Shown piece by piece: positions 12,683-20,343 of a stretch of DNA of 64,000 nt. The notes below the pieces were generated by a model. That model was not told the origin of the DNA and did not search any database. It was given only the letters and a program-made list of their open reading frames with translations. Position 1 is the stretch's first letter, and each line of letters opens with the position of its first letter. The stretch spans positions 4,898,001 to 4,962,000 of the forward strand of contig CP075493.1 of the NCBI GenBank assembly GCA_021613535.1, read 5' to 3'. The position numbers were made by a program, and so were the translations under genes. The stretch comes from Adineta vaga. Its lineage: Eukaryota > Animalia > Rotifera.

Positions 12683-13240
12683 TTAAAGTTCAGAGTAATA
12701 GCGAACATGTAATCGACTACCAATGAACGCGACTAAACCCATAGAAAATATCGTCAATAAATGTCCAGTTTGTGTTAAATTTGCACTATAACCATTGTAT
12801 GTTGTGACACGTGAACCTTGAGCAAAAGCAGCAACCATAAAAAGTGCAGCAAGAAAAAGAAATATCGGTGCAATGAATGCTATGATACCACTTAAACGAA
12901 TAAAATTCATTGTTAACGTAACAATCATTCCTAAACCAAGTAAACAAAGTGCAGTAACTAAAAGACCTGCTGCATGTTGAGTACCAAGACCTAATGTTGT
13001 ACTTCGTTGCATATCAATACAACGTGATGTTCCATTTAATAAATTACCGCTACATTCCGTAAAAAAATTATAATGAAGTGTGCTGCCATCTGAACTCTGA
13101 TCAAAATACCAATATTGTGTAGCTGTTCCAACAATAGTTAAAGCAAGAGCAGTAATAGTAAAAAAACTTCCAACAATAGTTAAAACACGACTTAATGGAT
13201 CAATCGGTTCTGAAGATGTTCGTTTCGATGTAATTGCCAT
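12683..13240 (-). CDS. Claudin/PMP22-like four-transmembrane protein (intronless)
   Basis: Four hydrophobic segments. The first loop has T..W followed by FF.EC...C, a variant of the W-GLW-C-C signature. Confidence 0.8.
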   Translation of the reverse strand: MAITSKRTSSEPIDPLSRVLTIVGSFFTITALALTIVGTATQYWYFDQSSDGSTLHYNFFTECSGNLLNGTSRCIDMQRSTTLGLGTQHAAGLLVTALCLLGLGMIVTLTMNFIRLSGIIAFIAPIFLFLAALFMVAAFAQGSRVTTYNGYSANLTQTGHLLTIFSMGLVAFIGSRLHVRYYSEL

Positions 13241-14204: not shown

Positions 14205-14831
14205 CTATTTATGAATGGGTTTCATTAATTTTTCTTCTTCTTGTTTACGAAAATAATGAATACGACCCGTAGCAAAGGCACTTGAAAATAAACTTAATAT
14301 ATTGAGTACATGACCTGTTTGGTAAAGATTAGCTGAATAATCATTGAATAACAAATAACGTGAACCTTCTGCCATGCCAGCAGTCATAAATAAACAAGCA
14401 ACAAAGAATAAGATCGGTGAAGCAAGATTAATCCATGCAAATGATGGATGAAATATTAAAATAACTGTTGCCACTAGTGCAAATGCAAGAAATAGAATGG
14501 CAACAGTACATAAAGCAGCTGCATTCTGTATACGTACATTGTAATCACGCATCCATCGAGATGAAGTCGAATATCTCGGATAATCTGTAAGATTTTCTGT
14601 TCGACTTGTACAATTATTGAAAATACCATTTGTAAAATGGCAAGTATAGAAAAAACTAGCAGTAGTTGATAATGTATAAGATCCACCACTTGTATTGATA
14701 TAAGAAGATTCCCATTTAGGTGTACCAATACCAACACAAACGAATAGCAATGCAAGAATTCCAAGAATACAAGTTAGAATAAGAATTTTTTGACTAAAAT
14801 TGTCAATTTTTTCTAATAACACCGTTGACAT
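14205..14831 (-). CDS. Claudin/PMP22-like four-transmembrane protein, tandem paralog (intronless)
   Basis: Reads GIGTPKW...FFYTC...C with four TM segments. Shares GSR...N.YSANL.QTGH.L.I.S with the neighbouring gene. Confidence 0.8.
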   Translation of the reverse strand: MSTVLLEKIDNFSQKILILTCILGILALLFVCVGIGTPKWESSYINTSGGSYTLSTTASFFYTCHFTNGIFNNCTSRTENLTDYPRYSTSSRWMRDYNVRIQNAAALCTVAILFLAFALVATVILIFHPSFAWINLASPILFFVACLFMTAGMAEGSRYLLFNDYSANLYQTGHVLNILSLFSSAFATGRIHYFRKQEEEKLMKPIHK

Positions 14832-15340
14832 TTTTTCTTATAACTGCGAATGAATGAAAAGAAACGAGAATTATTCGATGATGTACGTAGTTCTCTTTAA
14901 ATTGTATTTTTACGCTGAGGAGAGGTATAGAACATGAAATCAAATAATATTGACGAATATTCGTCGTTAATAAAGAAATGTGTAAATAATTCTTTATGAA
15001 ATATTAAAAAAATTGGCTAGTGAATAAAGTTCGTTTCGTAAACCTGTAGAGAATCTATTTATTACCTATAAACACTATGTCAAATATATCTACTTAAGAT
15101 TAATCATTTGATCATCAAGTTTGTTTTTAATACTATGAAGTATAAGTACTTTCATTGATAATATTGAAATTGAATGTTTGTATTAAATTAAGAAATAGTT
15201 GAATAAAATATATTTCCTTGTTTAAAAGAAGCAGATTTTACAGAAAATACGATAACGCAAAAAGAAAAGCGAATAAACAAAATACAATATTAAATAGACG
15301 ATCAATAGAAAAGAACAAAATACCGAATAGAACATTTTTA

Positions 15341-15380
15341 TTGAGACGTTTCGATAACTACTGTTATCTTCGTCAGTCAA
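15341..15380 (-). ncRNA. Minimal type I hammerhead ribozyme (Penelope-type), minus-strand copy
   Basis: Reverse complement reads uuga-CUGACGA-A-gauaac-agua-guuauc-GAA-ACGU-C-ucaa. Confidence 0.85.
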
Positions 15381-15486
15381 GAAATGAATGTTTTAGAAAA
15401 GAACAATATATGTATATACAAATTATAATTAGACGAATGAAAATGAAAACAAAGAAAATGTAATTAGATAATAAAACATTCATTTC

Positions 15487-15526
15487 TTGACTGACGAAGA
15501 TAACAGTAGTTATCGAAACGTCTCAA
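15487..15526 (+). ncRNA. Minimal type I hammerhead ribozyme (Penelope-type), plus-strand copy; predicted cleavage after C15522
   Basis: Stem I ttga/tcaa, core CTGACGA plus one extra A, stem II gataac/gttatc with an agta loop, GAA, the palindromic ACGT in place of stem III, and the GUC cleavage triplet. Confidence 0.85.
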
Positions 15527-15625
15527 TAAAAATGTTCTATTCGGTATTTTGTTCTTTTCTATTAATCATTAAATGTATTCGCCGAATTAAAATAAAAAAC
15601 AACGAATCTAGAATTCTATTTGGTT

Positions 15626-18600
15626 TTATGCCAAAATGATGCGAACTAAAATAAAGAATAAGAAGATGACCGGACTGAATCGCAGTTGACCAACACCTAA
15701 AAGCAATTAATCAAATAGAACTTTTGTTCATAAACTATACTGAAAGAGTATTTATTACCATTGATACAACGTGTGATTGAACGTCCAAATGAATCAGTTA
15801 CTTGTTGTTCTCGTCGACCTGCTTTACATCGACATTGGTTACTGAGACACTCACCAAAGTCACCGCATATTTCATGAGTTGTACAATAACCATTTACTGC
15901 ACGAGCTAAGAAACGTAACAATAAATAGTTTTCTTTTTCATGTTTCTCTTTCGAATAACATACCACAAATACTGTTACTATCACTGCGATAGAAACCAGG
16001 AGAACAAGCACATTTGTTCTCATCTCTATTACAACCGGCATAAGGACTGATTGCAGAACAAAAATTTTGCGCATGAGCACAAGAATCATCGAAATTATTC
16101 TTTACTAAAATATATGAAAATCCTATTTTGAATCTTTTTTTTTAAAGAATCAGTTTCTTACTGCATCGCGAACCATCATCACGATAGTAAGGAAAGCATT
16201 GGGCTCGTTGACATGATGATGAACAAAACAATTCTCCATCATTTGTGAAACTACTCCACACGGTAGTGTTGCATTTTTCATGAAGTTTAAGCGGTGGTTC
16301 CTGTTTAACTATAATAAAATAGAAGAAATGAATAGTTTTTGCCTCATCAATATATACTTTGAATTTCAATTTGAAATACTTACCACATTGTCCTGATGGA
16401 GTAGTATAATATCCCTTTTTACAAACACATGTATAACCATAACATTCGGCATTGTCTTGACATTGTGATGGACATCGATTATTAACTAAACAGATTGAAC
16501 CATGAAAAACGAATAAAATTTCATATAAGAAAAAGTTCCTTCATACCACATGTTAAATCAGCGGGATTTAAGAAATAACCAGATTTACATTTGCATACTT
16601 TATAACGAGAATCATCACTTGTAGTACCACATTCAATATTTTTTTGATCTGCATCAATACCGCAATCTTCTTGAGAATTACATGTAACTGAAGAACGTTC
16701 ATGAGTACCAGGAAAAACATATTTCGAGAAAAGTTCTGTAAGAAATAAATGATCCTATTGCTTAATAAAACGAACAAGTTATCAATACTTACCACATTGT
16801 TTACTACGAACAAAACTTCGACGACGATCGCAATAACATGTATTATTACGACAAACAGCGCCTGATCCATGTAGAGCTTCACAATCGTTATCATTATTAG
16901 GTGCATCACAAGCTGTGTACATTGTTGGGTCAATTGCTTGAAGTTTTTCAGAAAAAATGTTTTTTCGGCCTAAACCAATTCAACTATATTCTATGTGTGA
17001 TCAAAACAAAAGGATACTAACTGCATCCTTGTTTGTCCACAGTTACGTTATATCCGAGAGGACATTTGCAAGTATAACTATCAGCCTATGAGATCAAAAG
17101 AACATGAAAATTTTGTAGTGATTGTTTCAAGACTTACCATAGAGGAAACAGGACAGGTACTGTCAGAAGTCAATGCTGCCTGAATTACTTCAACACGGAA
17201 AACTAGAGCAAAAAAGACGAATTGTTTTAGGAATAGATTAGAGTTTTTGCAACTACTACATACAGCATCTGTTACTAGACCAAAATGCAAAAGCTGCTTC
17301 CAAACATTCGCAATGGCCATCATTTTGTGATGCTTTGGCAGCATTTCCAAATAATCTTCGACAACCCACATCATTTATTCCAGTAGTATTTTCAGCTCCT
17401 GGTGTATTATTTTCATAAACAGCACTTGTTCGTGGAGCTAAAAATAAATATACAGATTATATTTCATTTTCTATGTACTAAAATCAAAATAATCATTCGT
17501 TATTTCCTGAAAAGAGATTCTTAGAGAAGTCTACAAAGTCACCTGAATGCAGAATGTATGACTATAAAATTGGGACTTTCCTGCGTCGGAAGATATTAGT
17601 TTAAAATAAAATTTCTATCATATAGCGATCTTAAACATTATATCAGAATAGTAAACAATTCTTTGGTGATCATTATACTTTCAAAAAGAAAACGGTCATT
17701 GAATATTGTCCGTGATAATTAATAAGTTAGTTTGCAGTATTGTAATAATAAAACGTTTACTTACTGCAAGTACGATTTGTTCCATCATTTTTGTAGCCAT
17801 CGACACATTTACATACTTGAGTGGATCCGTCTGAATTGGGAGGACAGTACTGACTATCAGTTGGACTGGGAAGTGCGTATTCAAGAAAGAAATCTAAAAT
17901 GAATCAATCCATCAATTCATAGGTGGAGAATAATAAAATATTTTGCAACACATACTACACGTAGAATTCTGAAAAAATGTTCCATCATTACAAACACATG
18001 CATTGTTATGAGCTCGGACAGGCGTATTAGTGTAAAGAGCTTGACAATCGATTGTAGTAACATCGCTGATAGCACCTTGTGACGGAGCATTTGATAAATC
18101 ATATAGTTGATTAACTTTTCGTTCTATATATCGACAGTTGTTTGATATATATTTTGTTTAAAAATCAGAATAATTCATCTTACCGCATAAACGATTCGAA
18201 CTCACAATGGGTCGATATCCAGTCTTGCATTTACATAATCCACCATTACTTTCAGCGTTAAATGGACAATCATTTGTATTAGCAGTATTAACATCAAGTA
18301 ATGTTGCTAGAATATTCCATAAAATAGCGTATTAATAAAAGATTTTAAACATACCACATCTTTCTTTTCCATTTTCATTTGTATAGAATGATTTATTCGG
18401 TATACATTGACATTCTCCTTGACTATAAAATCGTGAATATTCACCATATAGAGTAACACAAGTGGTATTGTAGTCTAATTCACCAGCTTGAGAAGAACCA
18501 GACTCTGCAGAGCTTAATTTAAGCTCTAAACAATACGAAAAGTAATGAAGCAATTTTAAATGAATAAAATTAATATACCGCATCGTCTCTTGTCACCAGA

Positions 18601-20343
18601 TGTTTTATATAAACCATATGGCGAACAAACACACTGTGACTTATTAACATTTGCATGCGGTGGACAATCACTGGAGACTGGATTTGATAGTGTTCTTTCC
18701 AAGAAAAGATCTTGAAGGAAAAAATTTGATCTATTGCTTATTCTTCCAACCATTGATACTTACAACATTTGGTGTTATCGTCAGCTAAAAATTGATTAAG
18801 ACCGCATGAACATATAGATTTATCGCGCCGTAATTGACAAGTCAATGGAGAAGGGCATAGACCACTCTCGTCTTGACGACTACCTTGTGAGTCTATACGT
18901 GTACAAACACCATATTCAAAATTATCACCTTTCCATTCCGGTTCAATACGTTCTAAAATATACTAATTTATTGTAGAGTTTATTAGTCTAAATTCAACTT
19001 ACGACAGGGTGTATTTTTATCCACGTATTGATAACCAGGTGCACATACACATAATCCATTTGGTGATACAGTAGTACCATTATCACCAACAATTGCACAA
19101 CCAGGTGAAGCATAATCATGTGTACTGATATCATAAGAATTCGGAAAGAGAACATCATGACGAGATTTGTCTTTGGAAAAAAAGAGTAAACAAAAATATT
19201 TTTTTTACAATTTAAACATACCACATTTATTGTCACCGGCTTTCGAGAAACCTGATCGACACCAACACGTTGTTTGATTAACAGTAACACACAATGCATT
19301 AGGATCTTGACATCTACCACATTGTACAGCAGGTAATTCTGTTTCTGATGGTGATAATGCACCAGGATATTGTTTCAATTCTGAACAAAAAAATTCATTT
19401 GTAGGTACCTTTACTTCTTTGTTCTTTTACATACCACATTCTTGTTTATCATAATTAGCTTCAAATGGTAATTCACATTGACAGAAACTTTCACGATTTG
19501 GCAGAATAGATTTACAAACTGCATGAATATCTTGACAACCGGCAATACCTTGTTCCGAATTGCAAAACTCACCGGATGCATTCGCAATAGTCCAGTTAGC
19601 CGAAAGTTTAGCAAGTTTTCTTTCTATAGATTAAATCGTCTCAATCAAATGCACAATCAAAACTTAGAAATAAACATACTACAACGAAGATTATCACCTC
19701 TTGGTTCCGAACCAAGAGGACATTTACAGACACCTTCACGGCAGTCATTTGACCAACATTCACTCGAAGATGAACATGTTGTATTCAAGCTTTTATCTAG
19801 TTGAAAAAAAAAGAAGTTCGAATAGATTCATAATAAAATAGAACACAATATTATCCAATGCATTTTCCGCATTATAATTAACATATGCTCTACTTGTTAC
19901 AATACTTACAACAAAGTCCATTGGAGGCCGTGAAATCTGGTTTGCATTTACATTGCTCTTTTTCACATATAGTATTATTCAGACAATTTTCAACAATCCG
20001 ACATGTTTGTCCTTCATAAACGAATGCCGGATTGACACCTATAATATTTCATGAATAAAACAAAACAAAACAAACATTTCTTTCCAAAAATTGAACACTT
20101 ACTACATGTTGTTGTTAGACAAGGTAAATAATATGGTGTATCACATTTACATGTTGCATCTTGACATTTAGTTCCTTGACCACCACATTGTGTAGCATTC
20201 GTACACGGAATATCCAGCGTAACTACGAATGTTTTCATGAACAATATACAAACGAAGGACAATTGATACTTACTCGCGTTGGTAAATGAGATTAGAATGA
20301 AGAATAGGCTTCCGAAAGATAACAGATAACGAAAGAACGACAT
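15626..20343 (-). CDS. Large secreted/GPI-anchored cysteine-rich protein with many EGF/EB-like modules (more than 20 exons)
   Basis: Signal peptide MSFFRYLLSFGSLFFILISFTNA. Repeated modules such as CTNATQCGGQGTKCQDATCKC and CTTHEICGDFGECLSNQCRCKAG, mostly with phase-1 introns. Ends in a hydrophobic tail GVGQLRFSPVIFLFFILVRIILA*. Confidence 0.85.

What the first reader, a model, noticed from the sequence alone, without database searches (positions are those of the whole stretch)
15304..15563. Twin back-to-back hammerhead ribozymes in a perfect 92-bp inverted repeat just downstream of a gene's stop codon
Seen: both arms contain an intact core, ttga-CTGACGA(A)-gataac-agta-gttatc-GAA-ACGT-C-tcaa, immediately followed by AATAAA. 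The arms are 100% identical and point outward, so a transcript from either strand meets the antisense copy first and then a sense ribozyme. Established: minimal type I hammerheads with a palindromic tetranucleotide replacing stem III are hallmarks of Penelope-like element pLTRs and cleave efficiently only as dimers, and PLE insertions often have inverted ends. The repeat begins about 60 nt after the stop (15626) of the Cys-rich surface-protein gene. Inference: its 3'UTR could fold a 92-bp hairpin that sequesters the ribozyme and poly(A) signal and could feed the RNAi machinery. This may be a self-silencing RT-less PLE relic, or a co-opted switch between cleavage/polyadenylation and dsRNA formation.
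Basis: partly seen in the sequence, partly recalled or inferred. Interest (0 to 1): 0.8.

Follow-up and report, generated by a model that had tools for sequence, protein, structure and literature searches.

The report
Ribozyme-bearing Penelope-like retroelement remnant, head-to-head
The twin hammerhead motifs are real, but they are the usual footprint of a small, protein-less Penelope-like retroelement insertion in a bdelloid rotifer genome, not a purpose-built switch for the neighbouring gene.

Summary
Observation confirmed. Arms 15300-15395 and 15472-15567 are 96 nt with one mismatch (92 nt perfect). Each carries an intact minimal type I hammerhead pointing outward.

Rfam finds no hammerhead, but it also misses the ones beside Penelope ORFs in this genome. 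A covariance model built only from other families of this genome finds exactly these two sites (39.7 bits, E about 2e-9). Both stems covary across families.

The genome (6 contigs, 100.8 Mb, 30% GC) is most likely Adineta vaga. It holds at least seven short pairs of this motif, in at least three sequence families. All are head-to-head, and three have 11-13 bp target-site duplications. That matches the published anatomy of Penelope-like element (PLE) insertions.

The left copy is a full unit of about 172 nt. The right copy is 5'-truncated, with a possible 40-nt tail. No RT/endonuclease ORF lies nearby, and no autonomous parent was found. Older copies of the family have decayed cores.

A transcript holds only one sense ribozyme, so the two cannot form a dimer in cis. 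A read-through RNA folds into a -162 kcal/mol hairpin, against -11 for the ribozyme alone. Co-option as a 3'-end or dsRNA switch is unsupported and was not testable here.

An ordinary, young transposon relic. The scan also noted a tandem hammerhead pair elsewhere in this genome.

The parts
15300..15471 (-). Full-length family-A unit (pLTR-like, about 172 nt), read on the - strand from 15471 down to 15300
   Evidence: Its 5' end (..GTAATTAGATAATAA on the + strand) is shared by independent loci L041, L042 and L044. Its 3' end (..CTATTNATC) is shared with solo copy L003 and with the right arm.
15300..15395 (-). Left arm of the inverted repeat
   Evidence: 96 nt, 99% complementary to 15472-15567.
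15341..15380 (-). Minimal hammerhead, - strand copy (core 15376..15345, predicted cleavage after C at 15345)
   Evidence: 39.7 bits, E about 2e-9.
15404..15422 (-). TATA-like palindromic tract. It lies about 27 nt upstream of an ACATTC initiator-like motif (15392) on the - strand; candidate internal promoter
   Evidence: Read. By analogy to the TATA plus Inr described in A. vaga Penelope pLTRs (PMC3846280). Inference only.
15472..15567 (+). Right arm: a 5'-truncated copy of the same unit, starting 19 nt upstream of the ribozyme core
15487..15526 (+). Minimal hammerhead, + strand copy (core 15491-15522, predicted cleavage after C15522)
15525..15530 (+). AATAAA right after the ribozyme; mirror copy at 15337-15342 on the - strand
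   Evidence: Read.
15568..15607 (+). Possible 'tail' extension on one arm only
   Evidence: Local similarity to the tail of L041. Score 23, reached by 19 of 3000 random window 45-mers and 44 of 2000 shuffles. Tentative: the rival reading is a 7-bp duplication ATTAAAT at 15289 and 15568.
15626..15628 (-). Inferred stop codon of the upstream Cys-rich (EB-module-like) membrane protein gene
   Evidence: plus a splice reading.

Best explanation
This is a young, ORF-less insertion of a Penelope-like retroelement (PLE) terminal unit. A full pLTR-like unit of about 172 nt lies on the - strand (15300-15471). It is joined head-to-head to a 5'-truncated copy of the same unit on the + strand (15472-15567), possibly with a 40-nt tail reaching about 15607. 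Each copy carries the minimal type I hammerhead that PLE terminal repeats carry. In PLEs that motif is thought to process multimeric element RNA as a dimer. The inverted layout arises from the PLE integration mechanism (self-priming or template switching, with endonuclease resolution), not from selection at this locus. Here the two ribozymes are on opposite strands, so no cis dimer can form. In any read-through RNA the sense ribozyme would be locked in a 96-bp perfect duplex. The motifs are therefore most likely catalytically silent passengers. Shown: the anatomy, family membership at motif level, recurrence of the layout, target-site duplications at sister loci, and decay of older copies. Inferred: mobilisation in trans by a PLE RT/endonuclease, the internal promoter, and catalytic silence.
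For: - Motif and repeat.
- Independent covariance model without family A: both arms score 39.7 bits, E about 2e-9, with all 8 modelled pairs standard.
- Covariation across families: helix II is 94.6% paired, with changes on both sides at 3 of 4 pairs. The inner two pairs of helix I also change on both sides. The covariation score is 0.482 against 0.167 for shuffles, 0 of 500 reaching it.
- ORFs that match GIY-YIG or are homologous to an RT/EN-type ORF have a motif of the same architecture 0.2-0.7 kb downstream on the same strand. Examples: C2:285249, C2:289615, C2:292157, C2:16246408, C5:763467, C3:19727702.
- Seven short pairs are all in (-,+) head-to-head order: C1:4913345/491, C2:10097135/269, C5:1935553/714, C5:3883711/4007, C4:658837/9008, C4:481614/770 and C3:10708958 (L041). 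Two kb-scale pairs have the same order. No (+,-) pair was seen.
- Target-site duplications of 11, 13 and 12 bp flank the pairs in L041, L016 and L035.
- Solo arms L003 (about 97-98% identical) and L004 share the 3' end and differ at the 5' end, as retroelement copies do.
- Published anatomy: inverted pLTR next to a direct pLTR, a one-sided 30-40 bp tail, target-site duplications, solo pLTRs, head-to-head as the commonest order (PMC3846280; PMC8557442). Minimal hammerheads in PLE repeats have an unpaired base between A9 and 10.1, G10.1-C11.1 and a palindromic helix III. Opposite-strand pairs 100-700 bp apart and rotifer examples were noted (PMC4209133).
Against: - No RT/endonuclease ORF lies near any family-A, -B or -C copy, and no autonomous parent with this terminal sequence was found in the assembly. 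The PLE link therefore rests on motif architecture and insertion anatomy, not on a shared element sequence.
- The RT/EN-linked copies have AGCU, not ACGU, as the helix III palindrome.
- The target-site duplication of this particular copy is unresolved.
- No empty site is available.
- Self-cleavage was not tested.
Confidence: 0.8

Rival explanations
1. Live non-autonomous element. The 172-nt unit would be a SINE-like or retrozyme-like parasite of PLEs with its own promoter. It would make short ribozyme-bearing RNAs that are retro-copied in trans, and this locus would be a possible source copy, not a dead relic.
For: - The unit has a fixed 5' end at four loci.
- A TATA-like tract lies about 27 nt upstream of an initiator-like ACATTC.
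- The 5' ends of the short copies (right arm, L003, L004) cluster within about 14 nt of that site.
- The copies are young: arms 99% identical, solo copy about 97-98%.
- The unit length falls in the range reported for animal retrozymes, and a 2026 preprint derives retrozymes from PLE pLTRs.
Against: - Only about 5-6 copies were found in 100 Mb.
- There is no tandem array, so no cis dimer and no obvious route to circular RNA.
- There are no expression data.
- The older copies are decayed.
Confidence: 0.25
2. The insertion would now provide the 3' end of the EB-module gene and act as a switch between ribozyme cleavage or polyadenylation and dsRNA (RNAi) production.
For: - The first canonical AATAAA on the - strand after the stop at 15626 is the one behind the - strand ribozyme (15342-15337; read).
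- A read-through RNA folds into a hairpin at -162.3 kcal/mol, z = -25.
Against: - The layout is generic to PLE insertions genome-wide.
- Sister copies sit beside unrelated genes.
- Older copies lose the ribozyme core.
- The monomer fold pairs GACG of the core with CGUC at the cleavage site, an inactive form.
- Published minimal hammerheads cleave poorly even as dimers.
- There are no expression or small-RNA data.
Confidence: 0.05
3. A miniature inverted-repeat DNA transposon (MITE) that happens to contain hammerhead-like cores.
For: Long terminal inverted repeats, short overall size, and target-site duplications at sister loci.
Against: - Single arms occur alone with a constant 3' end and variable 5' ends.
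- The arms are unequal: a full unit against a truncated one.
- The right-arm truncation point differs between the window and L041.
- The duplications vary in length (11-13 bp).
- The motif shows RNA-level covariation and is shared with RT/EN elements.
Confidence: 0.03
4. An assembly artefact (fold-back chimera).
For: None beyond the perfect symmetry of the arms.
Against: - The arms are only 96 nt, around an asymmetric, non-palindromic 76-nt spacer that has homologues elsewhere.
- The same layout occurs at six other loci, three of them with target-site duplications.
Confidence: 0.02

Closest known systems
Minimal hammerhead ribozymes of Penelope-like element pLTRs (Cervera & de la Pena 2014, PMC4209133)
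   Same: CUGANGA and GAAA boxes; one unpaired base between A9 and G10.1; G10.1-C11.1; a long helix II (6 bp); a short helix I (4 bp); no helix III hairpin but a palindromic tetranucleotide; C17. That paper also noted pairs on opposite strands 100-700 bp apart.
   Different: No RT/EN ORF lies beside it. The palindrome is ACGU, whereas the RT/EN-linked copies found in this genome have AGCU.
Adineta vaga Penelope insertions with an inverted pLTR, tail and target-site duplication; solo pLTRs (Arkhipova et al. 2013, PMC3846280; Craig et al. 2021, PMC8557442)
   Same: Head-to-head inverted terminal repeats, with one copy shorter. A possible one-sided 30-40 bp tail. Duplications of 8-13 bp at sister loci. 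A TATA-like palindromic tract in the repeat. An insertion among host genes.
   Different: No internal ORF or captured DNA between the repeats. The unit (about 172 nt) is slightly shorter than the 181-218 bp pLTRs described. It could not be assigned to a named Pen family.
Animal non-LTR retrozymes (Cervera & de la Pena 2020, PMC7229834; Li et al. 2026 preprint)
   Same: A short (170-400 nt) non-coding unit with a type I hammerhead, probably derived from and dependent on PLEs.
   Different: Retrozymes are direct tandem arrays whose adjacent ribozymes dimerise and release circular RNA. This is a single inverted pair with a minimal, helix-III-less ribozyme.
Athena/Terminon 3' ends (EN-deficient telomeric PLEs of bdelloids)
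   Same: A hammerhead motif at the 3' end of a rotifer PLE.
   Different: No reverse-complement telomeric repeats follow the ribozyme. The locus is internal and gene-rich.

Membership tests
PLE-type minimal hammerhead (min-HHR) | Conserved core boxes CUGANGA ... GAAA and a cleavable H17 | tested here: met
   CTGACGA, GAA+A, and C17 at 15522 (+) and 15345 (-).
PLE-type minimal hammerhead (min-HHR) | One unpaired nucleotide between A9 and 10.1, and a G10.1-C11.1 pair closing a long helix II | tested here: met
   unpaired A at 15498 and a 6-bp helix II that starts G-C. G-C at this pair in 10 of 11 aligned motifs.
PLE-type minimal hammerhead (min-HHR) | No helix III hairpin; positions 15.1-16.1 form a palindrome that can pair only between two copies | tested here: met
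   ACGT at 15518-15521. Consistent with the absence of an Rfam hammerhead hit.
PLE-type minimal hammerhead (min-HHR) | Helices supported by compensatory changes among families of the same genome | tested here: met
   80% of cells paired, 19 cells with changes on both sides, 0 of 500 shuffles reaching the score. The sequences are related, so this is supportive and not a probability.
PLE-type minimal hammerhead (min-HHR) | Self-cleavage, at least as a dimer | not testable with these tools
   The predicted monomer fold is an inactive extended hairpin. The predicted homodimer gains only about 2 kcal/mol over two monomers and is not the ribozyme dimer.
Penelope-like element insertion | RT plus GIY-YIG ORF between the terminal repeats | tested here: not met
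   No such ORF lies within the held flanks of this copy or of sister copies. None of the 53 RT/EN-like matches in the genome lies near families A, B or C. It is therefore filed as an ORF-less derivative, not as an autonomous PLE.
Penelope-like element insertion | Head-to-head inverted terminal repeat, 5' truncation, one-sided tail, target-site duplication | tested here: met
   Inverted layout and truncation. Duplications at sister loci L041, L016 and L035. For this copy the tail and its own duplication are inconclusive.
Rfam Hammerhead type I (RF00163) and other hammerhead models | Score at or above the family threshold | tested here: not met
   No hit even at E<=10. The ORF-linked motifs are missed too, so the models do not cover the helix-III-less form.
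Animal retrozyme | Direct tandem repeats with one hammerhead per unit | tested here: not met
   The copies are inverted and there are only two of them.
Athena/Terminon 3' end | Reverse-complement telomeric repeats right after the hammerhead | tested here: not met
   No ACACCC or CCCACA (either strand) in 15200-15700.

The most novel reading that the evidence does not exclude
The insertion has been taken over as the 3' end of the EB-module surface-protein gene. Its mRNA would run through both arms to the AATAAA behind the - strand ribozyme, so it would carry a perfect 96-bp hairpin. That hairpin would feed the rotifer's RNAi machinery, with ribozyme folding and hairpin folding competing during transcription. 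A milder variant is likelier (about 0.25). In it, the 172-nt unit is a live, promoter-bearing, retrozyme-like parasite of PLEs, and its short copies are retro-copies of transcripts that start at its own initiator.
Probability: 0.05. Interest if true: 0.6.

Novelty: new member of a known kind. Interest (0 to 1): 0.25.

Why it matters
It also gives a small census for this genome: at least 31 motifs, with about 40% in short head-to-head pairs, and several ACGU-type families with no coding partner in the assembly. That is useful for transposon annotation of bdelloid genomes and for the open question of how PLEs integrate, but it does not change the current picture. Only if the hairpin proved to be part of the neighbouring gene's mRNA would it become a case of transposon-driven 3'-end and RNAi regulation.

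Tried and rejected
- Rfam at gathering score and at E<=10: no hammerhead. Shown to be uninformative.
- Weak H/ACA and C/D snoRNA and miRNA hits over the arms (best: TtnuHACA6, 30 bits against a gathering score of 100). Dismissed as chance matches driven by the hairpin.
- Search for a coding parent. The arm and the whole element were used as DNA queries against the genome. ORFs in 10-kb flanks of sister copies were scanned with Pfam and are all host genes: TPR/ART, cupin, PhyH, F-box, GH10, aldo-keto reductase. No parent was found.
therefore gave coordinates only.
- Pfam on the held parts of the large ORFs in L057 and L058 found nothing. Those parts hold the GIY-YIG region and an insert, but the RT region lies outside the held DNA. 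The GIY-YIG match and the homology stand in for it.
- Empty-site search with both flanks: only self-hits.
- Exact-protein look-ups of neighbouring ORFs in public assemblies, to reach another haplotype or RNA contigs: not on record.
- Metagenome scan for the family-A ribozyme: no match.
- The left arm of L041 seems to end exactly at the cleavage site. An alternative alignment with a 10-nt deletion is about equally good, so this was not used as evidence of cleavage in vivo.
- The Terminon paper (PMC5850863) is not held.

Full report
**What is there**

The region holds a 268-bp inverted structure. Arms 15300-15395 and 15472-15567 are 96 nt long with one mismatch, and 76 nt lie between them.

Each arm contains the pattern CTGANGA-N(6-30)-GAAACGTC. 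It occurs exactly twice in the 64-kb window, against 0.02 expected from shuffles.

Parsed as RNA, each copy has these features:
- a 4-bp helix I (UUGA/UCAA);
- the core CUGACGA;
- one unpaired A;
- a 6-bp helix II that begins with G10.1-C11.1 and has a 4-nt loop;
- GAA;
- the palindrome ACGU in place of a helix III hairpin;
- C17, followed by AAUAAA, which overlaps the 3' strand of helix I.

The two copies point outward.

**Is it a hammerhead?**

Rfam reports no hammerhead at gathering score or at E<=10. That negative carries little weight. Motifs of the same architecture sit just downstream of GIY-YIG/RT-type ORFs in this genome, and Rfam misses those as well.

I built a covariance model from eight motifs of other sequence families of the same genome. 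Two of the eight are linked to such ORFs, and none belongs to this family. In the window the model finds exactly the two arms at 39.7 bits, E about 2e-9. All eight modelled pairs are standard, and the next best hit scores 14.3 bits.

Across 11 motifs from four families:
- helix II is 94.6% paired, with changes on both sides at three of four pairs;
- the two inner pairs of helix I also change on both sides;
- G10.1-C11.1 is kept in 10 of 11;
- no shuffle out of 500 reaches the observed covariation score.

Every feature that Cervera and de la Pena (PMC4209133) list for the minimal hammerheads of Penelope-like elements is met. These are the extra base between A9 and 10.1, G10.1-C11.1, a long helix II, a short helix I, and a palindromic helix III.

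**Which genome**

The assembly has 6 contigs, 100.8 Mb and about 30% GC. It also holds a 1310-aa GIY-YIG-containing ORF, like the 1,309-aa Pen2a variant described for Adineta vaga. Earlier notes of this scan also call it A. vaga. I take it to be that species or a very close relative.

**Anatomy of the insertion**

Homologues elsewhere in the genome show that the two arms are unequal copies of one unit.

- On the - strand the unit runs from 15471 to 15300, about 172 nt. Its 5' end recurs at three other loci, L041, L042 and L044. Its 3' end (..CTATTNATC) recurs in the solo copy L003 and in the right arm.
- The right arm is the same unit truncated 19 nt upstream of the ribozyme core.
- The 40 nt after the right arm (15568-15607) resemble the one-sided extension after the right arm of L041. 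The alignment score is reached by 19 of 3000 random window 45-mers. If this tail is real, the element ends about 19 nt from the stop codon at 15626.
- The target-site duplication of this copy is unresolved. ATTAAAT flanks the repeat (15289 and 15568), but it is AT-rich and nearly palindromic, so it could equally be an extension of the inverted repeat.

**The layout is generic**

Pattern searches and the model search of the whole genome give at least 31 motifs. The model search scored only 150 of about 17,000 candidates.

Seven short pairs were found:
- C1:4913345/491 (this one);
- C2:10097135/269;
- C5:1935553/714;
- C5:3883711/4007;
- C4:658837/9008;
- C4:481614/770;
- the older, decayed family-A pair at C3:10708958 (L041).

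All seven are in (-,+) order, that is head-to-head with the ribozymes pointing outward. Two kb-scale pairs around truncated ORFs have the same order (C2:289615/292157 and C5:759633/763467). No (+,-) pair was seen.

Three pairs from two families have clean target-site duplications of 11, 13 and 12 bp (L041, L016, L035). Two of these (L041, L016) have a tail on one side only.

The right-arm truncation point differs between the window copy and L041. The inversion is therefore made anew at each insertion and is not copied as a unit.

This is the published anatomy of PLE insertions: an inverted, shorter pLTR next to a direct one, a 30-40 bp tail at one end, target-site duplications, solo pLTRs, and head-to-head as the usual order (PMC3846280; PMC8557442). 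Opposite-strand pairs of minimal hammerheads 100-700 bp apart were already noted in Schistosoma.

**Link to coding elements**

ORFs with a GIY-YIG match, or with homology to an RT/EN-type ORF, have a minimal hammerhead 0.2-0.7 kb downstream on the same strand. One locus shows the classical two-direct-plus-one-inverted arrangement (C2:285249, 289615, 292157). These copies have AGCU as the palindrome.

Families A (this one), B and C have ACGU, and none lies near any of the 53 RT/EN-like matches. The flanks of sister copies hold ordinary host genes. No autonomous parent of family A was found. The copy is therefore an ORF-less derivative, presumably mobilised in trans. This last step is inferred.

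**Age and selection**

The arms are 99% identical to each other, and about 97-98% identical to the solo copy on C3. The insertion is therefore young.

Older relatives are degraded. In L041 one core reads CUGACCA and helix II is weakened. In L042 both core boxes are mutated. There is no sign of selection on the ribozyme after insertion.

**How it probably behaves**

- A single transcript contains one sense ribozyme and one antisense copy, so the dimer that this ribozyme type needs cannot form in cis.
- The - strand RNA from the stop codon through the element folds into the full hairpin at -162.3 kcal/mol (z = -25).
- The isolated ribozyme folds at -11 kcal/mol into a form that pairs GACG of the core with CGUC at the cleavage site.
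- Two copies in trans gain only about 2 kcal/mol and do not adopt the ribozyme dimer in the minimum-energy prediction.
- Published minimal hammerheads cleave poorly even as dimers.

I therefore expect no cleavage in read-through RNA. If such RNA exists, a long perfect duplex is expected, and that would be a plausible Dicer substrate. No canonical AATAAA lies on the - strand between the stop at 15626 and the one behind the - strand ribozyme (read). Read-through is therefore possible, but it was not tested.

**An inference worth a test**

A TATA-like palindromic tract (15404-15422) lies about 27 nt upstream of an ACATTC initiator-like motif on the - strand. The 5' ends of the short copies (right arm, L003, L004) fall within about 14 nt of that point. 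The short copies could be retro-copies of transcripts that start at the unit's own promoter. That would make the unit a small retrozyme-like parasite of PLEs. There are no expression data.

**Context**

The element sits between two - strand genes. Upstream is a multi-exon Cys-rich gene with weak EB-module matches and a hydrophobic C-terminus. Downstream is a claudin-like four-helix membrane protein gene (14205-14831).

**Verdict**

The co-opted switch half has no support and several arguments against it. This is a new member of a known kind, of modest interest.

Noticed in passing
window 15626-19400 (-): Multi-exon gene made of short Cys-rich modules. It has weak EB-module matches (E = 5e-5, just below Pfam's cut-off), a transmembrane stretch and a hydrophobic C-terminal exon after a short GT..AG intron at about 15700-15757.
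   Followed up: partly
window 14205-14831 (-) and 12683-13240 (-): Two neighbouring single-exon ORFs with weak claudin/PMP22-family matches (E about 1e-4, below the cut-off). Probably tandem paralogues of a four-helix membrane protein.
   Followed up: no
L046:1255-3831 (-) = G000:C3:1097154-1099730: An 859-aa uninterrupted ORF that combines an ADP-ribosyltransferase domain (ADPrib_exo_Tox/ART, E about 1e-8) with a long TPR array. It lies about 6 kb from a solo family-A arm.
   Followed up: no
L004:1814-3079 (+) = G000:C5:3313151-3314416: An intronless glycosyl hydrolase family 10 (xylanase-like) ORF, E = 3e-71, about 250 bp from a solo family-A arm. A candidate horizontally acquired gene.
   Followed up: no
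G000:C1:16384281 and C1:16394075 (L013, L014): Two identical family-C hammerhead motifs lie 9.8 kb apart on the same strand, in a stretch of C1 (16.0-16.4 Mb) dense in RT-like matches. A 445-aa ORF beside one of them has no Pfam match. Possibly a large Athena/Terminon-type array.
   Followed up: no
L035:1405-1763 = G000:C5:1935457-1935815: A family-B pair with a nested structure. A 47-nt piece of the spacer is the inverted copy of the sequence left of the left arm, and a 12-bp duplication (AAGGTTTTTATT) flanks the whole structure.
   Followed up: partly
L059:2307-3149 (-) = G000:C2:16247623-16248465: An ORF with an AP-endonuclease-type 'endonuclease-reverse transcriptase' domain directly abuts the truncated PLE ORF. 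This fits the published case of a Penelope copy inserted into a non-LTR retrotransposon.
   Followed up: no
window 15491-15522 (+): With C at core position 7 and ACGUC at the cleavage site, GACG can pair with CGUC, giving an inactive extended hairpin. The AGCUC-type motifs next to ORFs cannot form this pairing.
   Followed up: partly
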